Shown here in pieces: positions 7,651 through 62,981 of a DNA stretch of 64,000 nucleotides. This stretch comes from Botryllus schlosseri. Taxonomy: Eukaryota. The notes under the pieces are model-generated. The model was given only the letters and a program-made list of their open reading frames with translations. It searched no databases and was not told the origin of the DNA. Numbering within the stretch: the stretch's first letter is position 1; each line of letters opens with the position of its first letter. A program made the position numbers and the translations under genes. Location of the stretch: NCBI GenBank assembly GCA_051294905.1, contig CM119386.1, forward strand, positions 6,758,001 to 6,822,000, read 5' to 3'.

Positions 7651-7975
7651 CAGGCAATTGAGCCGAAAATGAATGCACGTCGAAGGACTATGCTTTATGT
7701 ACTGTGTAAGTTACAATATAGCTCGCGGACTGTTGTAGTTAGCTGCCACACACTGATAGCTTTGTAGACAGGATACGAGCCGGCTCTCAGATGTTTCGCC
7801 TCTTCTTCAAACTACACACTAGTAGAATCTTTTTAAATAATAGGCTTGAATTAACAGTCCTAGTTCACAACAAAAATGCGTTTTTGTTAAAGGGAAACTT
7901 ATGAAAATATTTTACGAGTGACCGGACTGTAAATTATTTGTTGCACAGTATAAACTATAATAATCTAAACTAAAG

Positions 7976-8205
7976 ATGGAAGAAAGAACCACTACCACAA
8001 CTACTACTTCCACAACGACAACTTCACAAGTAGCAATTGGCGTGAACGTTGGATTCTTAACGACTCCTTTAGGGATTCTTATCATCGTGGAATTCGTTCT
8101 AACGTTGCTCGCATGGACCTTGCTGGTTAGCGTGTGGTGGTACCCTTCTTACTCAGCACTTGGCTTTGCTGCGTTCGGATTCATCTTCAGCTGGTTGATT
8201 ACATT
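7976..8205 (+). CDS. MARVEL-domain 4-TM protein, copy 1, coding exon 1 (gene join 7976-8205, 9348-9497, 11270-11402; 170 aa)
   Basis: ATG at 7976 in aaagATGG context; donor TT|gtgagt at 8206. Spliced product: MEERTTTTTTTSTTTTSQVAIGVNVGFLTTPLGILIIVEFVLTLLAWTLLVSVWWYPSYSALGFAAFGFIFSWLITLGFFVVFVFGLHASTFANLPWGTIQIFCNLIFALLCFISACCVAAWAKHGSKLQASCAFGFIATVFYAISVLLSFRKAYGRFPWQNVANQSANT*. It has four hydrophobic helices and MARVEL-like motifs (FLxTPxGILxIVE; FGLH...LPW; A(S/A)xFGFxATxxY). Exon lengths 230+150+133=513 nt stay in frame across two phase-2 introns. Confidence 0.92.
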
Positions 8206-8877
8206 GTGAGTACAGCCATTCACGATCAGGAATATTCCAAAGTTCAGGCTAGTTATATCCGTCTAATGTAGGAGTCGTCAACACCTGACACGCGTGCCTC
8301 TTGTGGTACGCGAGTTGATTTTTTTCCTGACGCGCGGAACTATTTTGAGCGTGCCGCGAGCGTACGATGGTCACAATCACCCTTTCAAATAAGCCCCACT
8401 TTTTCGAAGAAATGAAGCATACTTTAATAACTAATATCAGGACTCCCGTGACGCCCACAAGTCTTACCTTTTATCTGCTAGGCTTTGTTTGCTGTGGCTG
8501 ATATCCATTGTTTGAGAGAATTGGTTTTAAAACCACGACTGAACGTGGTCTGTGGTTACCAATAAACAGTGTGTTTATATTTCCCTGATTTCATCGATTT
8601 CTCTTCGGCTTCTTGACATTTAATCACAAGGTCGAAATCAAGGCGGTTAAGCTTACCTATGGGTTTCAGCTTTTAGATATGCGGTTGGTATGATTCCTCG
8701 CTCAATTGATTCGAAAATTGTGGCAAAATTCAAAATGTTGTTCACGATATGTTCTCAGGAGGCGCTAAATTGCCGACTTATTTCACCCTTGTCAGAGCAT
8801 GAAAACGCAACAGTAATTCGCATGATTTATTCGCCGCCATTGGCGTTGATAATACGCTGGAATTTCGCTACGTAAAC

Positions 8878-9270
8878 CAAAAGGTGGTCAAAGTAGTCAA
8901 GACTCAAGAACATTACTTAAGTAGAAGAAGTACCCACACAGAATTCTACTCAAGTACAAGCGGGAGTGGTGTTTTACGAAGCAGCCCAAAACTACTTCAA
9001 GCAGAGCTGTATGGATTTGTGTTGCTTTACATCCCATGCCGTAGATATATCTTTTCAACAGTTCAGTATTCGATCGCATCATGTCATACAAATGATACCT
9101 CTTCCACAGAACAGTAGTTCTATATACCTTTGTTTCACCTAAGAACGCCTTTCAGAAATTGGATGGCATTGCGCCCTCCTTTATTATAAGGCTCGTAACC
9201 CTTATTACTTCTATTTTATGTAACCTACTCTTGAAAATCGTTACTTGTGATTGAGTGGTGAACACTGGCG
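8878..9270. mobile_element. Old decayed AGTAGA-family hAT relic in MARVEL intron 1
   Basis: Begins ggtggtcaaagtagtcaag...actcaag; orthologous relics at 40638-41008 and 60391-60780, so it predates the duplications. Confidence 0.7.
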
Positions 9271-9347
9271 AAATTAACATATACTTGAGTATCGTCAACA
9301 ATTTTGACCGAGCCTGGTCCAATCATTGCACATTGATAATTTCACAG

Positions 9348-9497
9348 GGGATTCTTCGTAGTTTTTGTATTCGGTCTCCATGCAAGCACGTTCGCGAATC
9401 TGCCCTGGGGAACTATTCAAATATTCTGTAATCTGATATTTGCATTGCTGTGCTTTATTTCTGCGTGTTGCGTTGCCGCATGGGCGAAGCATGGCAG
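9348..9497 (+). CDS. MARVEL copy 1, coding exon 2
   Basis: Acceptor tttcacag| and donor GCAG|gtaaag; 150 nt, phase 2-2; encodes (L)GFFVVFVFGLHASTFANLPWGTIQIFCNLIFALLCFISACCVAAWAKHG(S). The ORF track misses it. Confidence 0.92.
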
Positions 9498-9834
9498 GTA
9501 AAGTAATACTCACACTGTATATCCATTTCCTATAATAGTAAACGTCCCACCCCGATATGTATGTACTAATTGTACTTGTGCTTTAGTGCTTACTTCATAC
9601 TGTGTGGTTTCGCAACGTCCCGATCACTAGCCGATATGCTATTGTCATTATAGATAACTATTCCACGGATAGACGCGAAACAGATGATAGGCCTATATGG
9701 TTTCAGTGACCTGATCACATTATAATATTAATTTTCGGGATAAGTGTGACAGCGGCTGTACGTTCATTTTGAACAGGTTTGAATAAATTTTGCGCTCGTA
9801 TCGTCAGCAATGTAGTGTACGAATATAAATGCCA

Positions 9835-10160
9835 CTGTGATTGTGGTTACGTGGAAGAACGTCGAACCGTTTGCAGAAACGCATAAACCATGCATGACCC
9901 TATATTTATCAGAAAACGTGCATCACGCTCGGTGAAAAGCTCACCCTTAACTCATCCGCTCAAGCTTGAGGCTGAACGTTCAGAGGCCATAAAATCTGCC
10001 ATTGGCAAACATGTGTTGGATAATCCCGCTTTTGCCGAAAACTATCGAGGCGACAGATTTCGCGTCATCTGGAGCCCTGGAGGGGCCCTCACACTTTCAT
10101 CTGTCAGCCCAAGTTATGTCTACAAAAGGAGTTTGTGTACCACCTTAAAATAGTACATTG
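9835..10160 (+). mobile_element. Penelope-like element fragment (GIY-YIG endonuclease C-terminus) in MARVEL-1 intron 2
   Basis: Frameshifted CDCGYV...HDP.FIRK...SAIGKHVLDNPAFAENYRGDRFRVI...PKLCLQKEFVYHLKI; absent from copies 2 and 3. Confidence 0.7.
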
Positions 10161-10636
10161 AACGCTCTCATATTTGAGATTGCATTTCATGCTGGTGACG
10201 TCATATTTTATGATACGATTGCTGATATGCAATGTTCTTCCAAATTCTCTACTAATTGCTGACGATTACCGCTGACTCAATTGGATCGTCAGCTAAAACA
10301 TTACCATATCAGGTTACAAAGCAACCAGAAATTGCAAGCCAAATCTGATTGCCCACCGTAAAGTCCCATGTTTCGCATCTATTCATAGGTTAGTTACCTA
10401 TCGTGATATTCAACTATGGTCCAGGAGGGGCCTACGATATTCAATATCAATATTGAATATCGTAGGCCCCGGTCCAGGTTTATTCCACTTAGTACAAATA
10501 GTACATACCATTGCTATTTGTGGCGGCTAACCCCATTGTACAGGATTAGCAGACCTATTCTTGATATTAGAACAATGCTATACTGTCTCATTTCAAGTAA
10601 TGCATACAAACAGTATGTATAGTTCATTCCATTATG

Positions 10637-10941
10637 TAGGGTTACCATACGTCCTCCTTTAGGAGGATTTGTCCCCCTTTTTCGGGTTTTTGAAAATGTC
10701 CTCCTTTTGAGATTTTGTCCTCTTTTTTAGGAATTTTGGTCAAATTTGTAGCAAAATTCGACTGAGATGCCGTAAATCAGCACCGTAGCACTGTGGTTTC
10801 TTTTTTTTTAGTCCGACTTTTTTTAACCGACTACGAAGTGGTAGAAAATTTTCACTTTTTCAGGATTTTTCACCGGTATTCTGTGGTTGAAAATTTTGAA
10901 AGAGTGTCCTCTTTTCCCGATTCCAAAATATGGTAACCCTA
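10637..10941. mobile_element. TAGGGTTACCATA-family MITE in MARVEL-1 intron 2
   Basis: TIR tagggttaccata...tatggtaacccta; cattatg is duplicated on both sides. Confidence 0.85.
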
Positions 10942-11269
10942 CATTATGTAAATTGAAGACTTGCCATACTGGCATAGCAACAAGACAGAGATAATTGTAC
11001 GTACATCCAACATTCCCATACCCACTTTCGGGCTAACAATGTGTTGTTTGTTTTAACCCAATTCAGGCCTTTGAAAGTCAATTGCGATCCTACTACTATC
11101 GGTTCTCTCAAATGTGCAGTGTGCGCTGGACACATCATGTGAAACCAGTAAAATATCATGCCCCATTAATAAGTGCAGTTTCTAGTTGGGTGAAGAAGCC
11201 ACTTCAACTACCTGTGGAATGTTACAATCGATGAGATATTACTTGAATTGTACACATTTTGTTTTCTAG

Positions 11270-11402
11270 TAAGTTGCAAGCAAGCTGTGCGTTCGGATTC
11301 ATCGCGACTGTCTTCTACGCGATTAGCGTTCTTTTGTCTTTCCGAAAAGCGTATGGACGATTTCCTTGGCAGAATGTTGCCAACCAGTCTGCCAACACAT
11401 GA
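11270..11402 (+). CDS. MARVEL copy 1, coding exon 3
   Basis: Acceptor ttttgttttctag|; encodes (S)KLQASCAFGFIATVFYAISVLLSFRKAYGRFPWQNVANQSANT, TGA at 11400-11402; AATAAA at 11566-11571. Confidence 0.9.
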
Positions 11403-39774: not shown

Positions 39775-40004
39775 ATGAAACAAAGAACCACTACCACAAC
39801 TACTATTTCCACAACGACAACTTCACAAGTAACAATTGGCGTGAACGTCGGATTCTTAACGACTCCTTCTGGTATTCTTATCATCGTGGAATTCGTTCTT
39901 ACATTGCTTGCGTGGACCCTGTTGGTTAGTGTGGAGTGGTACGTTCGGGAACCATCACTCGGCTTTGCTGCGTTCGGATTCATCTTTAGCTGGTTGATTA
40001 CATT
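39775..40004 (+). CDS. MARVEL-domain 4-TM protein, copy 2, coding exon 1 (gene join 39775-40004, 43026-43175, 44089-44251; 180 aa)
   Basis: Paralog of 7976-8205 with the same 230-nt length and TT|gtgagt donor. Spliced product: MKQRTTTTTTISTTTTSQVTIGVNVGFLTTPSGILIIVEFVLTLLAWTLLVSVEWYVREPSLGFAAFGFIFSWLITLGFFIVFVFGLHESTFANLPWGMIQIFCNLVFALLCFISACCVAANASGWSNLQASCAFGFFATIFYAISVLVSFRKVYGRLFVRMVPTSQPTHERNRFIVQSL*. Confidence 0.9.
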
Positions 40005-41033
40005 GTGAGTACAGCCATTCACGACCAGGAATATTCGAAAGTTCAGGCTATAGTTATATCCATAGTGTAGGGGTATCCAACACCCGACAGTACGCGAGCT
40101 GATTTTTACATGACGTGCGAATTGATTTTGAGTGTACCGGGGACTACGATCGTAAGTCCAGAGCCCCTGATACGTCACAATCACCCTTTCTAATAGGCAT
40201 CCCCTTTTCGAAGAAATAAACATAAATTTAATAGCGGAAATCATGACTGTTGCTGCTATCCATTGTTTGATAGAATTGGTTGTAAAACCACGACTGAACG
40301 TGGTATTCGGTTACTGATAAACAATGTGTTTATATGTACTTGATTTTATCGATTTTTCCTTGGCTTCTTGACATTCAATCACTAGGTTGAAATCAAGGGG
40401 GTTAAGCTTTCTTACGGGTTTCAGCTTTCAGATATGCGGTTGGTATGATTACTCGCTCATTTGAGTCGGACATTGTGACAAAATTCAAAATGCTTCTCAC
40501 TATGTTCTTATGTAGGCGCTAAATTGCCGACTTATTTGAGCCATTTCAGAGCATGTAAACGCAATGTTCAGTAATTCACATGATGTATTCACCGCCATAT
40601 AGCGTTAGTAATACCTTAGAATTTTGCTACGTTAACTCAGAGGTGGTAAAAGTGGTGAAGACTCCAGAACGCTACCACAGTAGAAGAAGTAGCTACGCAG
40701 AATTTTACTCAAGTACGAGCCGGAGTAGTGTTTTCCGAAGCAGTCCAATACTACTTCAGATCCAAATGGGCTTTACATCCCGTATGCGGGAGATATATCT
40801 TTCAATCGTGTGATGCAAATGATACCTCCACCATAGAATAGTAGTAGGCCTACTCTATCTTTGTTTCACCTCAGTACTTCTTTTAGAAATTGAGCGGCTA
40901 TACACCCTCCTTCATTATAAGGATCGTTACCCTCATAACTTCTACCTTCATGTAACCTATAGTTATAAAAATCGCTACTTCTTGTAATTGAGTGGCGAAC
41001 ACTGGCAACATTAACATAGGCTATACGTGATTA

Positions 41034-42959
41034 CACTGGACAACAAAAATATTTCATCATAGTATGTGAGAACGATATGAGGGTAAATCGGGGGCGTTGA
41101 GCTCGAAAATAGCATTGGTTTCTGCGAATTAGCTCTATTTTTTCAGGATATCACCGAATTAGTCATTTTTATTTATTTATTTATTTTTATTTTATTCAAA
41201 CTAGGTTACATTTTATCCAAACTAAAGTAAATGTTTTAGTAGGTCCAATCTGTATTCGTAATAATGTTGAGGAGTCAGTGTTATCGTACTATAATTCGAA
41301 ATCAGGTCTGGCAGGGACGTAAAGCTGCGACTGGAGAATTTCAGGGTAGTGTGTAATTGGCTGTAAAGCAGAGTCAATGTTTAGGAATTGCTATGACTTC
41401 TTCTTTGGCCTCATGTATGTAAATTAGGTGTTTCTCCACATAATGTTAGAATTGTAGGCCTACTACTTATCTTCATTTCTGGTTGGAACTATTTGTCCTG
41501 GAGAAGTAGTTTGGCCTGAAAAAAACTTATTTGACTAAGAAACTGACAAATCTTTACATGAATTTTTTTTACTGAAATCTGGACCTATGAAGAATTCCAG
41601 TATAGTTACATCACGCATTATGGTAGAAATAATTAAAAAAATTGTAGTACAACAACGAAAGACACTTTCCGGAATTCTCGGGTAGAAAGTGTCTGTCCTT
41701 ACAAAGTCAAGAATGGAGGAAGAACGTTCAACAGCAGCAATTGTTTGCTGGCAACACTGAAGTTGTGCGTATACACTTCTGGTGACACACCGTGTAGCTT
41801 CATTCTGATAATGTTGTCCACATAACAATTTTTCATCATGCGCTTCTTGATATAAGAACCAATGCCCATGCAATCAGTTTTGCTTCAGTTAGGATATTGC
41901 GGTACGTTCAGCACAACACCATGCCAACCTATTAATTTCATTTGGCCGTTTATGATGCACAATGAACAGATAATGTGCCATCTACAATGGTAGGCCTATA
42001 AAGTAGGCTAAAAGCTGTAAAATGTCGTACGATAAGTTCACCGACTGTGCAATCATTTACGATACAAACGAAGTGCAGGTCGCAAAAAAATCTTGACTTT
42101 GTAAACAACTGTGACAATTTTTGGACCTAACGCCACAATCAGGTTTCATATTTACTAGAACGGATATATTCTACTAATAAATAATATTGAAAAATGTGCC
42201 CATCTAGTAGAAGCGATATCGTTTCTCGCAAGCAGAACGCCGTGGCGAAGGCCACGGTATCAGCGCTGTGGAAAATCCACGATCGTTTGAAACATAAATA
42301 AATCAAATAAAAAAGTCATCACACCTTGCAGTGGGCAATAACTGCTCAAATACTTCGTAGTTCTCACAGCACACAATGAACCACGCTTTTTAGGGATACT
42401 GCCGACTGCTAACTTAGTCCATTGATTGGCAAGATCAAGTAACAATAGACTTTTCTGATGCAGCTGAAAAAATAAACGGAGGACCCTAAATTGCCCTGAC
42501 TGAATCGATCCTGAATTTTTAAGGCGAATTTAGCTGTTTTATTTATCAGTCGTTTCAACACTATACAACAGTTGCCTTCTAAACCTACACCGGCCCCATT
42601 TGCTCTCAGCGCCTCCTACCGCCAAATTTCCTATCCAGTGCCCCCCAATCACCCATTTCATGGCCATCGCCCCTTCGCACTCGCGAACGCCCCCCAGGGG
42701 GTGCTGCAGCCAACTTTGGGAACCACTGATATCAACTAATCTAAGCCCATATTCACCTCCTCCAGCGCGAGTTAAGCTACATTACACACAAACATACTAC
42801 TTTTCTAGCATATGCAGGAAGAGGCAATATCTCAAAAGATGGATCCAATTCGGCAGAAGCAATGGCATTATCGGACTCAGCGCCCCTTATATATCCTACC
42901 CCTGGATCGATCTCACATACCATGATTTTTGAAAGAAAATTATTTTTTGTTGCCCTATG
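41034..42959 (-). mobile_element. Chapaev-like element in MARVEL-2 intron 1
   Basis: Imperfect TIR cactggacaacaaaaata / catagggcaacaaaaaata; TTA on both flanks; cggactcagcgcccc subterminal motif; decayed Cys/His-rich ORF at 41535-41873 (-). Absent from copies 1 and 3. Confidence 0.6.
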
Positions 42960-43025
42960 TTATTGTTAACGATTTCCACTGCATCAGTTTCAATAATTGC
43001 ACAATGCACATTGATAATTTCACAG

Positions 43026-43175
43026 GGGATTCTTCATAGTTTTTGTATTCGGTCTACATGAAAGCACGTTCGCGAACCTGCCCTGGGGAATGATTCAAAT
43101 TTTCTGTAACCTGGTATTTGCATTGCTGTGCTTTATTTCTGCGTGTTGTGTTGCCGCCAACGCGAGCGGGTGGAG
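43026..43175 (+). CDS. MARVEL copy 2, coding exon 2
   Basis: Acceptor tttcacag| and donor GGAG|gtaaag; 150 nt, open frame, many synonymous differences from copy 1. Confidence 0.9.
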
Positions 43176-44088
43176 GTAAAGTAATACTCAAACTTCTATA
43201 TTCCTTCCCTCTAAATAGGATGCGACCCACCCGAGATGCATTTACTTGGCGACGTTAGCGTGTGCTTTAGTCCCTACTTACACTGTGTGGCATAGCAATT
43301 AGCAACGTTCTGATCGTTTTCTGGTGTGATGTTATAGTTGTAGATAACTATCTCACGGATAGATGCGAAACTGATGTAAAAGGTTGGTTACGGTGACCTG
43401 ACCAGTGACCACATTATCATTTTTATTTTTGGGATAAGTGTGCCAGCAGCTGTGCTTTCATTTTGAACCAGCTTTAATAAATATTGCGCTCGGGTCGCCA
43501 GCTATAAGATTACCATATCTGTTTGCGAAGCAACCAGAAATTACAAGCCAAATTCTGTTGCCCAACCGTGCAGTCCCACCTTTCGCATCTATTCATATGT
43601 TAGTTACATATATATAGTGATATTCAACTATGGGCCAAGTTTATTACAAATAGTGTATGTCATTGCTATTTGTGGCGACTAACCCCAGTGTACAGGAGTA
43701 TCAGGCCTCTGTTTGATTTTAGAACAGTGTTATGCTAAGTCATTTCAAGTAATGCATACAAACAGTGCGTAGGCCTATACGTTACTCCATTGCGTAAATT
43801 GTAGACTTGATATACTGGCATATCAACAAGAAATAATGGTTCATCGCCATACCGACTTGCGTGCCTGCAATGTGTTTTTGTTATAACCCATTTCAGGCCT
43901 TTGAAAGCCTATTGCGATCCTGTGCTCTAACAGACATAGTGTGGGTTGGGCACGAGATGTTAAAAATGTAAAATATCATGCCTATTGATAAGTGCAGTCT
44001 CTAGTTGGGTGACGAAGCCACTTCAACTACCTGTGGAATGATACTATCGATGAGATATTACTTGGATTGTATGCATTTTGTTTTCTAG

Positions 44089-44251
44089 TAACTTACAAGC
44101 AAGCTGTGCGTTCGGATTCTTCGCAACTATCTTCTACGCCATTAGCGTGCTTGTGTCGTTCCGCAAAGTGTATGGGCGGTTATTTGTCAGAATGGTGCCC
44201 ACCAGCCAGCCAACACATGAACGAAACAGGTTCATTGTTCAAAGCCTCTAA
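44089..44251 (+). CDS. MARVEL copy 2, coding exon 3 (tail frameshifted after TM4)
   Basis: Acceptor ttttgttttctag|. TM4 is intact. A 1-nt deletion near 44180-44187 relative to copies 1 and 3 bypasses the ancestral TGA (44218-44220), so the frame ends at TAA 44249-44251. ATTAAA at 44339-44344. Confidence 0.85.
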
Positions 44252-56368: not shown

Positions 56369-57102
56369 TTATTGATTATATTGTCCTGCTCGCACAATTA
56401 CGACGATCGTGGTTACTAACCAAGCGCGGGATAGCGTAAGAGCACCTATCTGGCGATGTCAATCAATTGCAATATAGCGTCGTCTAGTTGCAGTGCATTT
56501 GCCGAGAATACACCTCGTCGATTTTTCCAACATGACAGCGGTCTTTGTGAACAGTACCGAGTATTCGAAACACGGGGACACTTGATATTTACATGCACGC
56601 GTTACCGCTCCTGAAGGGGATATCCGCTCAAAGCTTGTAACCTACAATATTTTTCGATAACTCTTGATTCTTCGTTGAGCAACCCATTGATAGACTCGAA
56701 TTATGACGGCCCCTTATGCAACCCACATCAATCATCCCTCAAAGTCTGGCGCGCCAAACCCTAGTTTCTGAGCACCTTACCCCATATCCACCCACCAATT
56801 CTGCTGAAAATAAATGCACATCAAAGCAATATTTTTTATGTACTTTAGAAGTTACAATATAGCTTGCGGGCTGTTGCTATTTGCAACCACACACTTATTG
56901 CTTTGTAGACAGGATTCCGAGTCGGCTCTCAGATTTTTCGGTTGTCCTTGAATCGACACCCTAGGTGAATCTAGTTCAATATAACTGGCCTAAATTAACA
57001 GTCCTAGGTCACAACAAATATGCGTATTATTATTATAAAATATTTATGAAAATATTTTGGATAGATTTTCCGAGTCACCGGGCTGTAGTATATAAACTAT
57101 AG

Positions 57103-59083
57103 CAGTGCTTTTCAACCTGTGTGACGGTTCGCACTTGTGCGAATGAAAAAAATTCCAGTGCGAATGACGAAGGTAGTGCGAATAGGGCGAATGGAAATCC
57201 GGATCAAGTGCGAATGACGAAGGTGGTGCGAATGGTGCGAATGAAAATCCGGATCAAGTGCGAATCAAAATCTTGGTTAATTGTCAACTTTTCTGACGTG
57301 AAATAATTCAAATAAACCTTATAGGAAATTTAAGGTCAGTGTAACTTCTGTTGTTGCGACAGAATTGTAAAACTTAATACGACGCACCACTAATCGGAGC
57401 TCTCACGAGCCATCGTGAATTAATATTCCCACACTGTAATTATTACGTAACCAAACGTTTGGTTGGGAAGCTGGTTTAGTGGCAGTATACAGATCTCTAC
57501 AATCTCCATAGTGCCAGACATACAGTATATCAGCCCGTCTGAGCTTGCGACAGGCTGGAAAAATATCTTCAAATTGACTTTCTACACTCTTTCGCTATAA
57601 ACATCTTCATATTTTCGTAATAACTGTTCGATAAGCGCGAGGCACGAGGATAGTAGTAAATACTATCATTAAAGACTCACATTTGCAAGTTACTGTAACA
57701 CAAATTTTGCCTCCTTCGCAGGTTATTAAAGTATGGACCGCGAAGGGTGTAATTTTGGGTCGATACCATGCTATTTGTCAATATGTAGCCTATGCAGTAT
57801 TTATAGAATTTATTGCAAAAAAGCCTGTGTTGGGTACTGTACCCAATGAGCGAGACACGCAGAAAATATAACTTTATCATGAGAACTCATGATAAGATTT
57901 CCAAATGTTTTTTCTGGAAAACATGGTCGAAGCCCGTTGGGATGAATTAATGTAGGGGCGAGTAACGAGCGAGCTCAGGCATATGAGATTCATTCATTTC
58001 GAGACTAACCCCTTCTGCGTCGGGACACGTGAAGACGTAAAGTTTTGGCGAACAAACCGCTGGCGGTGCCAAAACATAAGCTTAGACAAAACCTCAGTCT
58101 AAAAATGACCGATTCTGGATGCTCAAACCTTTCGAAATGGATTGGATATACGCTCCGTTGTCGGCACGGAATAGGCCCGTTCTTGCAATCTGAGTAGACT
58201 GTAGTACAACTGAGATACGCAGAGGAATTCAATTCACTCTAATTTGAAATCGCGTACGTCATACATGTTTTGTTGAGCTGTCATGGGTAGAATTGTGGTG
58301 TACGCGCTCTGTATGTCACACATGCCCGTAAAATCGTAGCATACAACTGTAATGTTAAAAATGAATTCATTTTCATGGGTGAGGCACGGGTCGCGAGATG
58401 CCACAAAAACTCAAATATTGGTGGTAGTCTAAAAGCAACTTTACCGTTATTAAACTGTTATGAATTCTCAAGTTAGTAATGAGTAAAACACACAGTATCG
58501 TGAGTTATTTGCTCTTCTCATAAACTCGCGAGACAGAAGTTGCAGCAACGTATTATAAGGTAGCGAGCTCTAATGTGCCCTGATCGTTTTGCATCTTCTG
58601 TTCCATAAAGACGTAAGGCAAACGCCTCAACACACACATGTGGGTATTCCATCCTTTCGACAAACTGGAGCGTCGCGGGACCTTTGTGTCAGCTCTCAAA
58701 AACGATTTCTGCCAGCACGCATTTTTATTCGCGAAAAATATACGCTGCTGTATTTTGGATAGAAGTGCAGAACAGATTATAAGACCTGGTCAATCAAGCA
58801 CTAGTAGACGTTCTTGTACAAATTCCCAACAACATTGTTTGGCCGAGAAGGGTTTTAGTGAAATAGTTGAAAGCAAAACGAGCGAAAAAAGTTACCTTTT
58901 TAACGAAACACCTAACAGCTTAAGCTACATAGTAGTCAATTTGTTGCACATCTGAACAAAATGTTGTCAAGTAGGCCTATCTTCATCGTCTTTATGCATA
59001 ACAATTTTCGATTACTTTGTGCGAATGAAATTCATTTTACAAAAAAAAGTGCGAATGGAGCTCAAAAAGGTTGAAAAGCACTG
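57103..59083. mobile_element. hAT-like element replacing the start of MARVEL-3
   Basis: 16-bp perfect TIR cagtgcttttcaacct...aggttgaaaagcactg; many subterminal gtgcgaatg motifs; no TSD, and about 60 nt of the gene are missing at the junction. Confidence 0.85.
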
Positions 59084-59839
59084 AACGGCCAATTCACGAG
59101 TATCAATTGGCATCAACGTCGGATTCTTAACGACTTCTTCTGGGATTCTTATCATCATGGAATTCGTTCCAACGTTGCTTGCGTGGACCCTGCTCGTTAC
59201 CGCGGCTCCCGCAGGGTGGTGCGCTTATGTACCAGTACTCTGCTTCGCTGCGTTCGGATTCATCTTCAGCTGGTTGATAACATTGTGAGTACAGCCATTC
59301 CCGATCAGGAATATCCTTAAGTTCAGGCTATTGTTATATCCATCTAGTGTAGGGGTCGTCAACACCTGACACGCGTGCTTCTTGTGGTACGCGAGTTAAA
59401 TTTTTTCATGACGTGCGGAATGATTTTGAGCGTACCGGGGCCTACGATCGTAAGCCTCGAGCGTACGATATGTCACAATCAACCTTTCAAATAGTCACCA
59501 CTTTTTCGAAGAAATGAAACATCATTTTGGAACGAAAATCATAGCTCCCGAGACGCCTACGTGTCTACCCATTATCTAGGCTCTGTTAGCCGTTGCTGAT
59601 ATCCATTGTTTGAGCGAATTGGTTATAAGACCACGGCTGAACGTGGTATATGCGATTACTAATAAACGATGTGCTTAATTGATTCGTAAATTGTGACAAA
59701 ATTCAAAATGTTGCTCACGATATGTTCTCAGGGAGACGCTATATATTGCTGACTTATTTGACTATTTCCAGAGCACGAAAACGCAATAGTAATTCTCTAA
59801 TTCACATGACGTATTCACCGCCATTGGCGTTGATAATAC

Positions 59840-60360
59840 TATAGAAATTAAACATGAAACGGCAACGATCGATTTTGCAGCTTCGTTCCGCTTCGCTGAG
59901 GCTGGAGTGGAGAATTGTTTTGCGTAAGCGACTGTAGGATTTCTGGCAATCCAAAAGTTATCTTCCAGAGCGCAGAAATTACTGAATCTGGTCTTGATCG
60001 AAACCTATTGCCGCATTGATTCAAAAAATATGAATGAAAATATAGTCACGCTTCAGTCATTGACGAAAAACCACCCTCAACATCTGAAATGTGCATTGTT
60101 CAGAACAATCGGGTAACGCGACCTAATGACCATAACAATGACCCGTTGCGACTCTCCAATTGTTCGAACAATGCTGATATTCCAGACTTGGAGGACGGAT
60201 TCTAGGTGGATCAGTGCCTGATCATATTTTAATTTATATTTTCGGAATTGGTGCAACAGTAGCTTTCGATCAAGACCAGATTCAGTAATTTCTGCCCTCG
60301 AAAAGATAGCTTTTGGATTGCCAGAAATCGGCCGTTACCCTGCCATGTTTAATTTCTATA
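59840..60360. mobile_element. Foldback-type MITE with long TIRs in MARVEL-3 intron 1
   Basis: Ends tatagaaattaaacatg...catgtttaatttctata plus a mirrored block ctggcaatccaaaag...gaaattactgaatctggtcttgatcgaaa; ataatac duplicated on both flanks. Confidence 0.8.
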
Positions 60361-61468
60361 ATAATACGGTAGAATTTTGCTACGTAAACCCTGACGTGGT
60401 CAAAGTAGTCAAGACTCAAGAACACTATTAAAGTAGAACAAGTAGCCACGCAGAATTCTACTCAAGTACAACCGGGAGCTATAGTGTTATTCGAAGCCAC
60501 CCAAAACTGCATCAAGTAAAGCTACGTGAATTTGCGTTGCTTTACATCCCTTGCCGGAGATACATTTTTTCAACAGTTTAGTATTCGACCGCATCATGTC
60601 ATACAAATGATAACTCTTCCATAGAACAGTAGTTCTATACCTTTGTTTCACCCAAGAACGTCTTTCAGAAATTGGATGGCATTGCGCCCTCCTATAGTTC
60701 GTAACCCTTATTACTTCTACTTTATGTAACCTACTCTTGAAAATCGTTAGTTCTTGTACTTGAGTGGTGAACACTGGTGACATTAACATATACTTGTATA
60801 TAGTCAACGATTTTGAACATCTGGTCCAATCACTGCACATTGATAATTTTACAGGGGATTCTTCGTAGTTTTTGTACTCGGTCTCCATGCAACCACGTTC
60901 GCGAATCTGCCATGGGGAACTATTCAAATATTCGGTAACCTCATATTTGCATTGCTGTGCTTCATTTCTACGTGTTGCGTTGCCGCATGGGCGAAGCATA
61001 GCAGGTAAAGTAATACTGCGTTGCCTCCGAGGCGAGATGGATGAGGTAGACTAATACTCAAACTTCTATATTCCTTTCCTATAATAGGATACGTCTCACC
61101 CGAGATGTATTTACTTGGCGTGTGCTTTATTAGTGCTTACTTTACACTGTGTGGCATAGAAATTAGCAACGTCCTGATCACTTTCTGGTGTGATGTTATA
61201 GCTAACTATCCCACGGGTGGATGCGAAACAGATGATAGATGGTTAGAGTGACCTGACCACATTATCATTTTTATTTTTGAGATAAGTGTGACAGCAGCTG
61301 CGTGCTTTCATGTTGAACAAGTTTTAAGAAATTTTGCGTTTGGTTCGCCAGCTATAAGATTACCACTTCTGTTTGTGAAGCAACCAGAAATTGCGAGCTT
61401 AATCCGGTTGCTTAACCGTGCAATCCCATATTCCGCTGCATCAACTCATAGGTTAGTTACCTATATAG

Positions 61469-61909
61469 TAGGCTTACCATACGTCCTCTTTTAAGAGGAT
61501 TTGTCCTCTGTTTTGGCTTTTTTGAAAGTGTCCTCGGAGGACGCCCTTTTGTCCTCTTTTTTGAGATTTTGTCCTCTTTTTTGAAAATTTAGGCAGATTT
61601 AGAGCAAATTGCGAGTGATATGCCGCATATTAGCACAGAAGTGAAGCTCCGGCGGGTGTTTCGGAGTTAAAAACGGTGATTCTAGCTCTGAGCGAAAAGA
61701 TGACCTTTTTTTTTTAGTCATCCACCTGGCAAAGTGGAGTAAAAAACGTTATTTTGAGCTCTGAGCAGAAGTGATGACCTTTTTTTTTTAGTCAACCGAT
61801 CGCAAAGTGGGAAAAATTAACCGGTATTTGAGAATTTTACTCGGTTTTGCAAGTTGAAAATTTCTGAAAAAGTGTCCTCTTTTATGATTTCCAAAATATG
61901 GTAAGCCTG
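61469..61909. mobile_element. TAGGGTTACCATA-family MITE in MARVEL-3 intron 2
   Basis: Ends taggcttaccata...tatggtaagcctg; TSD ctatatag/ctatgtag. Confidence 0.88.
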
Positions 61910-62981
61910 CTATGTAGTGATATTCAACTATGGTCCAAGTCTATTGCACTTGGTTAGTACAAATAGTCATAGTGTTTGTCATTGCTATTTGTGGCGGCGA
62001 ACCCCAGTGTACAGGATCAGTAGGCCAATGTTTGATATTAGAATAGTGTTATACTGTGTCATTTTAAGTAGGCTAATGCATACAAACAGTACGTTTAGTT
62101 TATTAAATTATGTAAATTGTAGACTTGAAATTCTGGCATATCAACAAGAAATAGATAATTGTTCACCCCCATACCGACTTTCGCTCTAACAATGTGTTGC
62201 TCGTTCTAACCCAGTTCAGGCCTTTGAAAGCGTAATGCGATCCTACTATGTGTTCTTACAGGCATAGTGTGGGCTGGACACGACAAAATGTAAAACGAGA
62301 AAATATCATGCCCAATTAACAAGTGCTGTCTCTAGTTGGGTGACGAGACCACTTCAACTACCTGTGGAATGTTACTATCGATAAGATATTACTTGAATTG
62401 TACGCATTTTGTTTTTTAGTAAGTTGCAAGCGAGCTGTGCGTTCGGATTCTTCGCAACTGTCTTCTAAGCGATTAGCGCTCTTGTGTCGTTCCGAAAAGC
62501 GCATGGGCGGTTTCCTTGGCAGAATGTTGCCAACCAGCCAGCCAACACAAGAACAAAACATGGTTAATTTCGAGATAATGGACTTGTGTGATTCATTATT
62601 GAAAGCCTCTAACTGACTTTACCGTACCAAAAATACGTTATTCGGACAGCACTTATGCTGCTTTTCTACTGGATTTACGCGGTAATTTTGGTTTGCTACC
62701 AAAATAAAACTACTGCATATTATACTGACTATGTGGAATATCACGTTCGTAGTGATCTCTTTATATGCAACGTCGGCAGCGAGATGTATGCATTTGATTA
62801 GGCCTGTGCTCTGCAACCAATCCTACTGTATTCATCTATTTTAGAACAGCAGGAAATAGGATTATGTTAGTGGCGGTTTCAGAATGTTAAATCGAGTCGA
62901 GCGTGGTAATTAGTATTGTATGAATGTTATTGGGAATTTCCCAGTCGAACCGAAATTTCCTGAATGGTATCTATGATATCA

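What the first reader, a model, noticed from the sequence alone, without database searches (positions are those of the whole stretch)
60977..61058. 41-bp tandem duplication preserves a fourth, orphan loop-2 variant with its own splice donor
Seen: gcgttgccgcatgggcgaagcatagcag|gtaaagtaatact (60977-61017) is followed directly by gcgttgcctccgaggcgagatggatgag|gtagactaatact (61018-61058). The two units share their flanks but encode different loops, CVAAWAKHS and CVASEARWM. The second variant matches no gene in the window. Splicing at the second donor (61046) would include an in-frame TAA, so it is non-productive here. Inference: the two units are too different to be a slippage copy. This looks like an out-of-register recombination or conversion between paralogs at exactly the variable loop, so loops may be swapped between family members like cassettes.
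Basis: partly seen in the sequence, partly recalled or inferred. Interest (0 to 1): 0.7.

Follow-up and report, generated by a model that had tools for sequence, protein, structure and literature searches.

The report
Recombination scar in a MARVEL pseudogene
An extra 41 bases in an intron of a dead sea-squirt membrane-protein gene are most likely that gene's former exon end, left behind when sequence from a neighbouring copy overwrote the exon; it is a tidy but ordinary trace of exchange between duplicated genes.

Summary
Copy C of a three-gene tandem MARVEL family has exactly 41 extra bases (61018-61058) compared with copies A and B. They sit directly after the exon-2 end and the first 13 intron bases, and they repeat those 41 bases (60977-61017) at 28/41 identity. 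Eleven of the 13 differences fall in the 20 bases that encode the variable loop. The second loop (VASEARWM) occurs nowhere else in the 495-Mb assembly.

- The gene has three coding exons. Intron 2 runs 61005-62419.
- Copy C is a pseudogene. A repeat removed its start codon, a TAA replaces a family-invariant Tyr, and its stop codon is lost.
- No C-specific RNA was seen in the little RNA sampled.

The duplication coincides with a recombination breakpoint. To its left C resembles A (91% against 81% to B); to its right C resembles B (87% against 74% to A). The best breakpoint lies between 60978 and 61061 (Fisher 1e-11, permutation p<1e-4).

Most likely A-type sequence overwrote C's exon 2 and was joined 41 bases out of register. 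C's old exon end stayed in the intron as a relic.

Loop-only "cassette" swapping is not supported. The A-like stretch is at least 600 bp and no donor bank exists.

The parts
60977..61017 (+). Unit 1: the last 28 bases of exon 2 of paralog C (loop VAAWAKHS) plus the first 13 intron bases. A-type sequence.
   Evidence: Differs from A's homologous 41 bases at 1 position and from B's at 12. The donor at 61004|61005 corresponds to the splice site used by RNA reads from an A-type copy.
61018..61058 (+). Unit 2: 41 extra bases holding a second exon end (loop VASEARWM) and a gtagac donor. Interpreted as the relic of C's earlier exon end.
   Evidence: Exact 41-column gap in A and B. Unique in the genome. 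Its loop is nearer to B's (7/20 differences) than to A's (12/20) or unit 1's (11/20). It shares the Ser codon TCC with paralog D.
60855..61004 (+). Exon 2 of paralog C (end of TM2, short cytoplasmic turn, TM3, start of extracellular loop 2).
   Evidence: A splice joint 59284>60855 with GT..AG ends is seen in RNA. The homologous exons match Pfam MARVEL positions 51-98 (C) and 56-98 (A).
61005..62419 (+). Intron 2 of paralog C. Unit 2 lies at its 5' end.
   Evidence: RNA loose ends after 61004 match the exons at 11270 and 44089, which are homologous to 62420.
62420..62552 (+). Exon 3 of paralog C (end of loop 2, TM4, tail). It carries a premature TAA at 62466-62468, and the normal stop is changed to AGA.
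   Evidence: Alignment with A and B; translation. The Tyr replaced by the stop is invariant in five related tunicate proteins. The end coordinate is approximate.
59084..59284 (+). 5'-truncated exon 1 of paralog C (no start codon). A high-copy repeat ends at 59083.
   Evidence: Alignment with A and B. At least 1438 genome candidates match 58940-59083. Contig depth there is about 280,000. No remnant of the ATG region was found upstream.
60400..61017 (+). A-like stretch of C (3' part of intron 1 plus exon 2 plus 13 intron bases).
   Evidence: Identity A-C 0.914, B-C 0.812, A-B 0.83. Sliding profile.
61059..61470 (+). B-like part of C's intron 2.
   Evidence: Identity B-C 0.868, A-C 0.74, A-B 0.685.
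7976..11402 (+). Paralog A, intact (exons 7976-8205, 9348-9497, 11270-11402; 170 aa). Carries the same loop type as unit 1.
   Evidence: Gene model. Aligns end to end with the Styela clava MARVEL protein P0002.
39775..44251 (+). Paralog B (exons 39775-40004, 43026-43175, 44089-44251). Loop is VAANASGW. The tail is shifted by a 1-base deletion near 44181.

Best explanation
Unit 2 is the original exon-2 end (loop codons plus splice donor) of paralog C.

Proposed sequence of events:
1. A break in C near the loop was repaired using paralog A, or an A-type copy, as template.
2. A-type sequence was copied across at least about 600 bp, through A's loop and 13 bases into the intron.
3. The new A-type loop could not pair with C's very different loop on the other side of the break. 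The repair therefore ended by end joining (1-base microhomology, T) and not by annealing.
4. The joint was 41 bases out of register. The result looks like a tandem duplication whose left copy is A-type and whose right copy is C's old sequence.

The extra 41 bases now lie in an intron and have no function. C has since decayed, or had already decayed, into a pseudogene.

Shown: the insertion, its uniqueness, the breakpoint, the pseudogene lesions and the gene model.
Inferred: the direction of copying (A to C), the single-step mechanism and the break position.
For: - Exact 41-base insertion compared with A and B.
- Unit 1 is A-type (1/41 differences). Unit 2 differs at 13/41 positions, 11 of them in the 20-base loop.
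- The maximum chi-square breakpoint lies between 60978 and 61061. Sites where A and C agree against sites where B and C agree: 69/19 on the left, 27/67 on the right (Fisher 1.2e-11; 0 of 10,000 permutations reach this).
- Identity profiles cross at the junction.
- C belongs to both close pairs (A-C on the left, B-C on the right) and carries the scar, so C is the most economical recombinant.
- Unit 2 fits the B-like right side: 10/41 differences to B against 14/41 to A.
- Unit 2 keeps the family's loop length, frame and splice phase.
- There is a 1-base microhomology at the joint.
- Experimental precedents exist. Tandem duplications arise from end joining of aborted recombination intermediates (PMC8654963). 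Homologous repair can terminate by microhomology end joining where the second end lacks homology (PMC5104497).
Against: - With three sequences and no alignable outgroup in the introns, the direction of exchange cannot be fixed. Neither A-to-C nor C-to-A fits the distances to B well.
- Part of the left/right contrast comes from A being unusually divergent to the right of the junction (A-B 0.685). B-C identity there is not unusually high.
- A pre-existing 41-base insertion would stop a conversion at the same point, so the coincidence of junction and breakpoint does not prove a single event.
- Unit 2's loop is not B's loop (7/20 differences), and no donor or allele carrying it was found.
- The only reads spanning the junction come from the probable source individual.
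Confidence: 0.55

Rival explanations
1. Two steps. An ordinary 41-base tandem duplication (slippage or end joining) arose in ancestral C, giving two copies of C's old exon end. Later an in-register conversion from A overwrote the upstream copy and stopped at the insertion, where homology with A ends. Unit 2 is still a relic of C's old loop.
For: It explains the same data: the breakpoint at the junction, the A-type unit 1 and the orphan unit 2. Heterology is a natural stop for a conversion. The 1-base microhomology is typical of small duplications.
Against: It needs two independent events where one is enough. No allele or paralog with two like units was seen.
Confidence: 0.25
2. An old exact duplication in C, followed by very fast change of the exonic loop (unit 1) under diversifying selection while the intronic copy stayed put. 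The new loop later passed from C to A by conversion, which ended at the insertion.
For: Both extracellular loops are the divergence hot spots of the family. Between A and B they show 8/15 and 9/15 base differences, against 0-4 in the other 15-base windows before B's frameshifted tail. The loops are also variable in related species.
Against: The selected copy would need about 10 changes in 20 bases while the flanks gained 2 in 21. That is a far larger excess than between A and B. It also needs the extra C-to-A transfer, and C carries the lesions of a long-dead gene.
Confidence: 0.1
3. Assembly artefact or chance resemblance. The 41 bases are not really there, or only look like the exon end.
For: Paralogs share 31-mers here and the read-derived contigs break at 60988-61000. 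The second individual (X5) has no contig over 60814-61161.
Against: A contig with no differences spans 60988-61492 at single-copy depth and includes C's private A at 61000. The chance of 28/41 matches is below 1e-6. The insertion is in exact register with the paralog alignment.
Confidence: 0.04
4. A working device: an alternative 5' splice site, or a stored loop cassette used to vary the protein.
For: Unit 2 keeps an open loop frame, a GT donor and the family's splice phase. An expressed copy with a loop junction that is not in the reference exists in another individual.
Against: An in-frame TAA lies at 61006-61008, and 41 is not a multiple of 3. No RNA joint at 61045 was seen. All RNA reads on the exon that cover sites private to C carry the letters of A and B, and no C-type letter was seen. 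The host gene has three disabling lesions. No other intronic loop copies exist in the window or beside paralog D.
Confidence: 0.03

Closest known systems
Interlocus (ectopic) gene conversion or unequal recombination between tandem paralogs
   Same: Mosaic similarity along the gene, with a statistically sharp breakpoint. One paralog (C) is close to different partners on either side.
   Different: Here the end of the exchanged stretch is out of register by 41 bases, so the overwritten gene's old exon end survives next to the imported one. Ordinary conversion leaves no such relic.
Tandem duplications from end joining of aborted homologous-recombination intermediates, and non-canonical termination of homologous repair (Kamp et al. 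2021, PMC8654963; Hartlerode et al. 2016, PMC5104497)
   Same: A short duplication at the place where templated synthesis ends, joined with minimal microhomology (1 base). Lack of homology at the second end (here the divergent loop) is the stated cause of such termination.
   Different: Those are experimental events that copy from a sister chromatid or an identical template, so the two copies are identical. Here the template was a diverged paralog, so the two copies differ. The mechanism is inferred here, not observed.
Small tunicate MARVEL proteins annotated 'plasmolipin-like / MARVEL domain-containing protein 1-like' (Styela clava XP_039273728.1)
   Same: Same length (170-174 aa), poly-Thr N-terminus, four hydrophobic segments and the conserved tail RKAYGRFPWQN..ANT. 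Variable residues are concentrated in the two extracellular loops.
   Different: The window's species has its own tandem set (A, B, C and D). A's exon-1 peptide is 64% identical to the Styela protein. No function is known for any of them.
Programmed cassette diversification (for example gene-conversion-based immunoglobulin or antigenic variation)
   Same: Only the superficial picture: a variable loop between constant flanks and a silent extra copy.
   Different: There is no array of silent donors, the exchanged stretch is much longer than the loop, the event sits in a pseudogene, and it is germline rather than somatic.

Membership tests
MARVEL domain proteins (Pfam PF01284) | Match to the PF01284 profile across the domain | tested here: met
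   A's three exon peptides match profile positions 1-53, 56-98 and 115-135 in order (19.3, 17.3 and 15.1 bits). Each is below the 32.8-bit cutoff on its own because only pieces could be submitted. A aligns end to end with P0002, P0007, P0008 and P0009, which carry precomputed PF01284 hits.
MARVEL domain proteins (Pfam PF01284) | Four transmembrane helices with two extracellular loops | not tested
   Four hydrophobic stretches are visible in the alignment. No topology predictor was run, so calling the loop 'extracellular loop 2' rests on the known MARVEL topology.
Interparalog gene conversion / ectopic recombination | Significant change of nearest relative along the sequence (breakpoint) | tested here: met
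   Maximum chi-square 45, Fisher 1.2e-11, 0 of 10,000 permutations reach this; breakpoint between 60978 and 61061.
Interparalog gene conversion / ectopic recombination | Identifiable donor for each part | tested here: inconclusive
   Unit 1 and the left stretch match A (1/41 differences; 91% identity). The right side is B-like (87%). Unit 2's loop has no match in the genome. The direction cannot be fixed with three sequences.
Replication-slippage tandem duplication | Two near-identical units, with differences spread at random | tested here: not met
   13/41 differences, 11 of them in the central 20 bases (P=0.002).
Alternative 5' splice site / mutually exclusive cassette | Reading frame kept, and RNA junctions from the second donor | tested here: not met
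   TAA at 61006-61008; the unit length of 41 is not divisible by 3. No joint from 61045 was seen, but RNA sampling was shallow: 6% of one run plus contigs of one older run.
Programmed cassette (donor-bank) diversification | Multiple silent donor copies of the variable segment | tested here: not met
   The flank-loop-donor motif occurs only at the three exon ends and unit 2 in the window, and once beside paralog D. The genome has only four clear paralogs.

The most novel reading that the evidence does not exclude
The hypervariable extracellular loops of this tunicate MARVEL family are shuffled between paralogs and alleles in the population as a regular source of surface diversity, for example for some form of cell or self recognition. 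Unit 2 would be a frozen snapshot of one such exchange. The expressed copy in run X23, with A-type exon 2 joined to a B-type exon 3 start and an extra Gly codon, would be another mosaic.
Probability: 0.07. Interest if true: 0.7.

Novelty: new member of a known kind. Interest (0 to 1): 0.27.

Why it matters
The scar is a rare natural case in which a gene exchange left the overwritten sequence beside the imported one. It shows what the recipient's loop looked like before the exchange, and that repair ended by out-of-register joining at a stretch of high divergence. That makes it a useful teaching example and a small piece of evidence that this tunicate MARVEL array evolves by patchy exchange plus fast loop divergence. 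It has no functional consequence here, because it lies in the intron of a dead gene. It does not reveal a new mechanism.

Tried and rejected
- **Short intron after the units.** I first tried acceptors at 61091 and 61133 and the open frame 61045-61248 as the last exon. This was rejected. A and B are broken in that frame, there is no RNA there, and the RNA loose ends and the family alignment place the last exon at 62420.
- **Whole-unit alignment.** A MAFFT alignment of whole gene units misaligned B around its 2-kb intron insertion and gave false counts. It was replaced by block-wise alignments.
- **Protein search with C's exon-2 open frame.** No candidates were found. This says nothing, because of the tool's length window.
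- **Metagenome scan for unit 2's 20-base core.** Six hits, all with unrelated flanks, so all are chance matches.
- **Search for other loop variants.** A search with the full-length Styela clava relative found five further proteins: four close family members from Logan run assemblies (source species unnamed) and one distant match. None of the four aligned family members has an EARWM-type loop, and full-length proteins of the window's own species are not in that collection.
- **Remnant of C's start codon.** A search upstream of the repeat found nothing.
- **Second individual (X5).** It has no contig over 60814-61161, so presence or absence of the 41 bases there could not be judged.
- **Not attempted.** A full-length spliced protein of A was not typed into the search tools, so no direct Pfam score for the whole protein was obtained.

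Full report
**1. The observation**

Three homologous gene copies lie in the window. In their alignment, copies A (about 9470) and B (about 43148) run from the shared gtaaagtaatact straight into caaac/cacac. Copy C has exactly 41 extra bases, 61018-61058.

These 41 bases repeat the preceding 41 (60977-61017) at 28/41 identity:
- 8/8 in the 5' flank
- 9/20 in the loop core
- 11/13 in the donor flank

That many matches has a chance probability of 7e-9 to 5e-7. The concentration of 11 of the 13 differences in the central 20 bases has P=0.002.

A pattern made of the flanks with a free loop occurs only at the three true exon ends and at unit 2. TRF missed the pair because two copies at 68% identity score too low.

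**2. Uniqueness**

- The 25-base core of unit 2, with up to 3 mismatches, is found once in the 495-Mb assembly.
- A degenerate pattern for C-V-A-S-E-A-R-W-M is also found once.
- A six-frame protein search with exon 2 finds A, B, C and one further paralog, D, about 9 kb beyond the window. D's loop is VASGSKRV. There is also one doubtful match on another contig.

No intact SEARWM gene exists in this assembly. A metagenome scan gave only chance hits.

**3. Read support**

In run X1, a 505-base contig matches 60988-61492 with no difference, at depth 47. Neighbouring single-copy contigs have depth 40-54, and no contig lacking the 41 bases is listed.

The contig starts 30 bases left of the junction, one short of the tool's own bridging rule. 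It includes C's private A at 61000.

X1 is probably the individual that was assembled, so this rules out a gross k-mer-level chimera but is not independent confirmation. The second individual (X5) has contigs on both sides at 3-4% divergence but none over 60814-61161.

**4. What the gene is**

RNA joints and loose ends, paralog alignments and relatives from other tunicates give a three-exon gene.

| Copy | Exons | State |
|---|---|---|
| A | 7976-8205, 9348-9497, 11270-11402 | Intact, 170 aa |
| B | 39775-40004, 43026-43175, 44089-44251 | 1-base deletion near 44181 shifts the conserved tail |
| C | 59084-59284, 60855-61004, 62420 onward | Pseudogene (section 5) |

A's exon peptides match Pfam MARVEL positions 1-53, 56-98 and 115-135 in order.

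The closest named relative is Styela clava XP_039273728.1, annotated 'plasmolipin-like / MARVEL domain-containing protein 1-like'. It has 172 aa and is 64% identical to A's exon-1 peptide. A aligns with it end to end, including the tail RKAYGRFPWQN..ANT.

Intron 2 of C is therefore 61005-62419, and unit 2 lies at its 5' end. The open frame at 61045-61248, which I first took for the next exon, is broken in A and B and has no RNA.

The variable segment at the end of exon 2 is the start of the TM3-TM4 loop. That loop has the same length in every copy in this genome, including unit 2, and in four of the five related proteins.

**5. Copy C is a pseudogene**

- A high-copy repeat (at least 1438 candidates in the genome) ends at 59083 and replaces the start codon and first codons. 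No remnant of them lies upstream.
- TAC has become TAA at 62466-62468, replacing a Tyr of TM4 that is invariant in the five related tunicate proteins.
- The normal TGA stop is AGA in C.
- At the sites private to C that they cover (60877, 60893, 60970), all RNA reads carry the letters shared by A and B. The X6 contig also carries A's private T at 60939. No C-specific read was seen.

RNA sampling was shallow: about 6% of one bulk run, plus the contigs of one older run whose RNA nature is a guess.

**6. The junction is a recombination breakpoint**

I aligned homologous blocks of A, B and C separately and classified the variable sites by which copy is the odd one out.

| Region | A-C identity | B-C identity | A-B identity |
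|---|---|---|---|
| 60400-61017 (left) | 0.914 | 0.812 | 0.83 |
| 61059-61470 (right) | 0.74 | 0.868 | 0.685 |

- A maximum chi-square scan over 60355-61470 puts the best breakpoint between sites 60978 and 61061.
- Counts of sites where A and C agree against sites where B and C agree are 69/19 on the left and 27/67 on the right.
- Fisher's test gives 1.2e-11, and none of 10,000 permutations reaches the observed value.
- A sliding profile shows the A-C and B-C curves crossing in the window that contains the duplication.
- Elsewhere in the gene the three copies are about equally distant, at 83-90%.

C belongs to both close pairs and carries the scar, so C is the most economical recombinant.

Unit 2 fits the B-like right side. 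It has 10/41 differences to B against 14/41 to A, and 7/20 against 12/20 in the loop alone. It also shares the Ser codon TCC with D.

**7. Mechanism**

The simplest account runs as follows:
1. A break occurred in ancestral C near the loop.
2. One end copied from an A-type template through the loop and 13 bases into the intron.
3. The other end still carried C's own, very different loop, so the two could not anneal.
4. They were end-joined with a 1-base microhomology (T), 41 bases out of register.

This kind of outcome has been shown experimentally. Tandem duplications arise from end joining of aborted recombination intermediates (PMC8654963). Homologous repair can terminate by microhomology end joining where the second end lacks homology (PMC5104497).

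I cannot separate this from a two-step history: a plain 41-base duplication first, then an in-register conversion that stopped at the insertion. A pre-existing insertion would block a conversion at the same point. In both histories unit 2 is a relic of C's earlier loop.

A third history is less likely. It supposes an exact duplication, then very fast change of the exonic loop, then transfer from C to A. That needs about 10 changes in 20 bases while the flanks gained 2 in 21.

The direction of exchange is inferred, not shown. The distances to B fit neither direction well. Part of the contrast reflects A being unusually divergent to the right of the junction.

**8. The cassette idea**

Both extracellular loops are the divergence hot spots of the family. 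Between A and B they show 8/15 and 9/15 base differences, against 0-4 in the other 15-base windows before B's frameshifted tail. The loops are also the variable parts in related species.

However, the one exchange documented here spans at least about 600 bp, not the loop alone. There is no bank of silent loops. The event also sits in a dead gene.

One loose thread remains. In RNA run X23, 20 reads continue after 61004 with TGG followed by B-type exon-3 letters, although their exon-2 letters are A-type. This implies an expressed copy or allele that is not in the reference, with one extra Gly codon at the exon 2-exon 3 junction within loop 2. One related protein, P0010, also has a longer loop with a Gly just before the conserved Asn. 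It hints at further allelic or mosaic diversity but proves nothing about cassettes.

**9. Verdict**

The host gene is a pseudogene, the gene model had to be corrected, and the generalisation to cassette-like loop swapping is not supported.

This is a clear example of a known kind of event, of modest interest. The array note gave the family lead, which I checked with Pfam and with homologues.

Noticed in passing
window 57059-59083 and 59084-59284: About 2 kb, ending in a high-copy interspersed repeat (at least 1438 genome candidates for 58940-59083), replaces the start codon region of paralog C. A's upstream region 7849-7913 reappears at 56993-57058.
   Followed up: partly
window 62466-62468: TAA in paralog C replaces the Tyr of TM4 that is invariant in five related tunicate proteins. 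C's normal stop codon is also changed (TGA to AGA).
   Followed up: yes
window 44160-44251: Paralog B has a 1-base deletion near 44181. It replaces the conserved tail RKAYGRFPWQN..ANT with an unrelated 180-aa ending (stop at 44249), so B may also be impaired. B also has a roughly 2-kb insertion in intron 1 (about 41018-43002).
   Followed up: partly
window 61004/61005 (RNA run X23): Twenty RNA reads with A-type exon-2 letters continue with TGG followed by B-type exon-3 letters (TAACTTAC...). This implies an expressed copy or allele with an extra Gly codon that is absent from the reference.
   Followed up: no
window 8130-8170, 39930-39970, 59215-59265: Loop 1 (between TM1 and TM2) is a second divergence hot spot. 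C has a 9-base insertion there, and all three copies differ in sequence.
   Followed up: partly
window 61092-61248: The conserved 5' part of intron 2 has a membrane-like open frame of 68 codons in C only. A and B are frameshifted or stopped there, and no RNA covers it. It could be an old decayed exon or chance.
   Followed up: partly
window 61547-61584 and 61663-61810: A 20-base repeat (1.9 copies) and a 73-base repeat (2 copies) lie in intron 2 of C. Very high contig depth from 61423 onward indicates another interspersed repeat.
   Followed up: no
L011/L012 (G000:C16:6830051-6832093): A fourth paralog, D, lies 8-10 kb beyond the window end. Three homologous coding exons were found, its loop 2 is VASGSKRVE, and its start codon probably lies in a further upstream exon.
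   Followed up: partly
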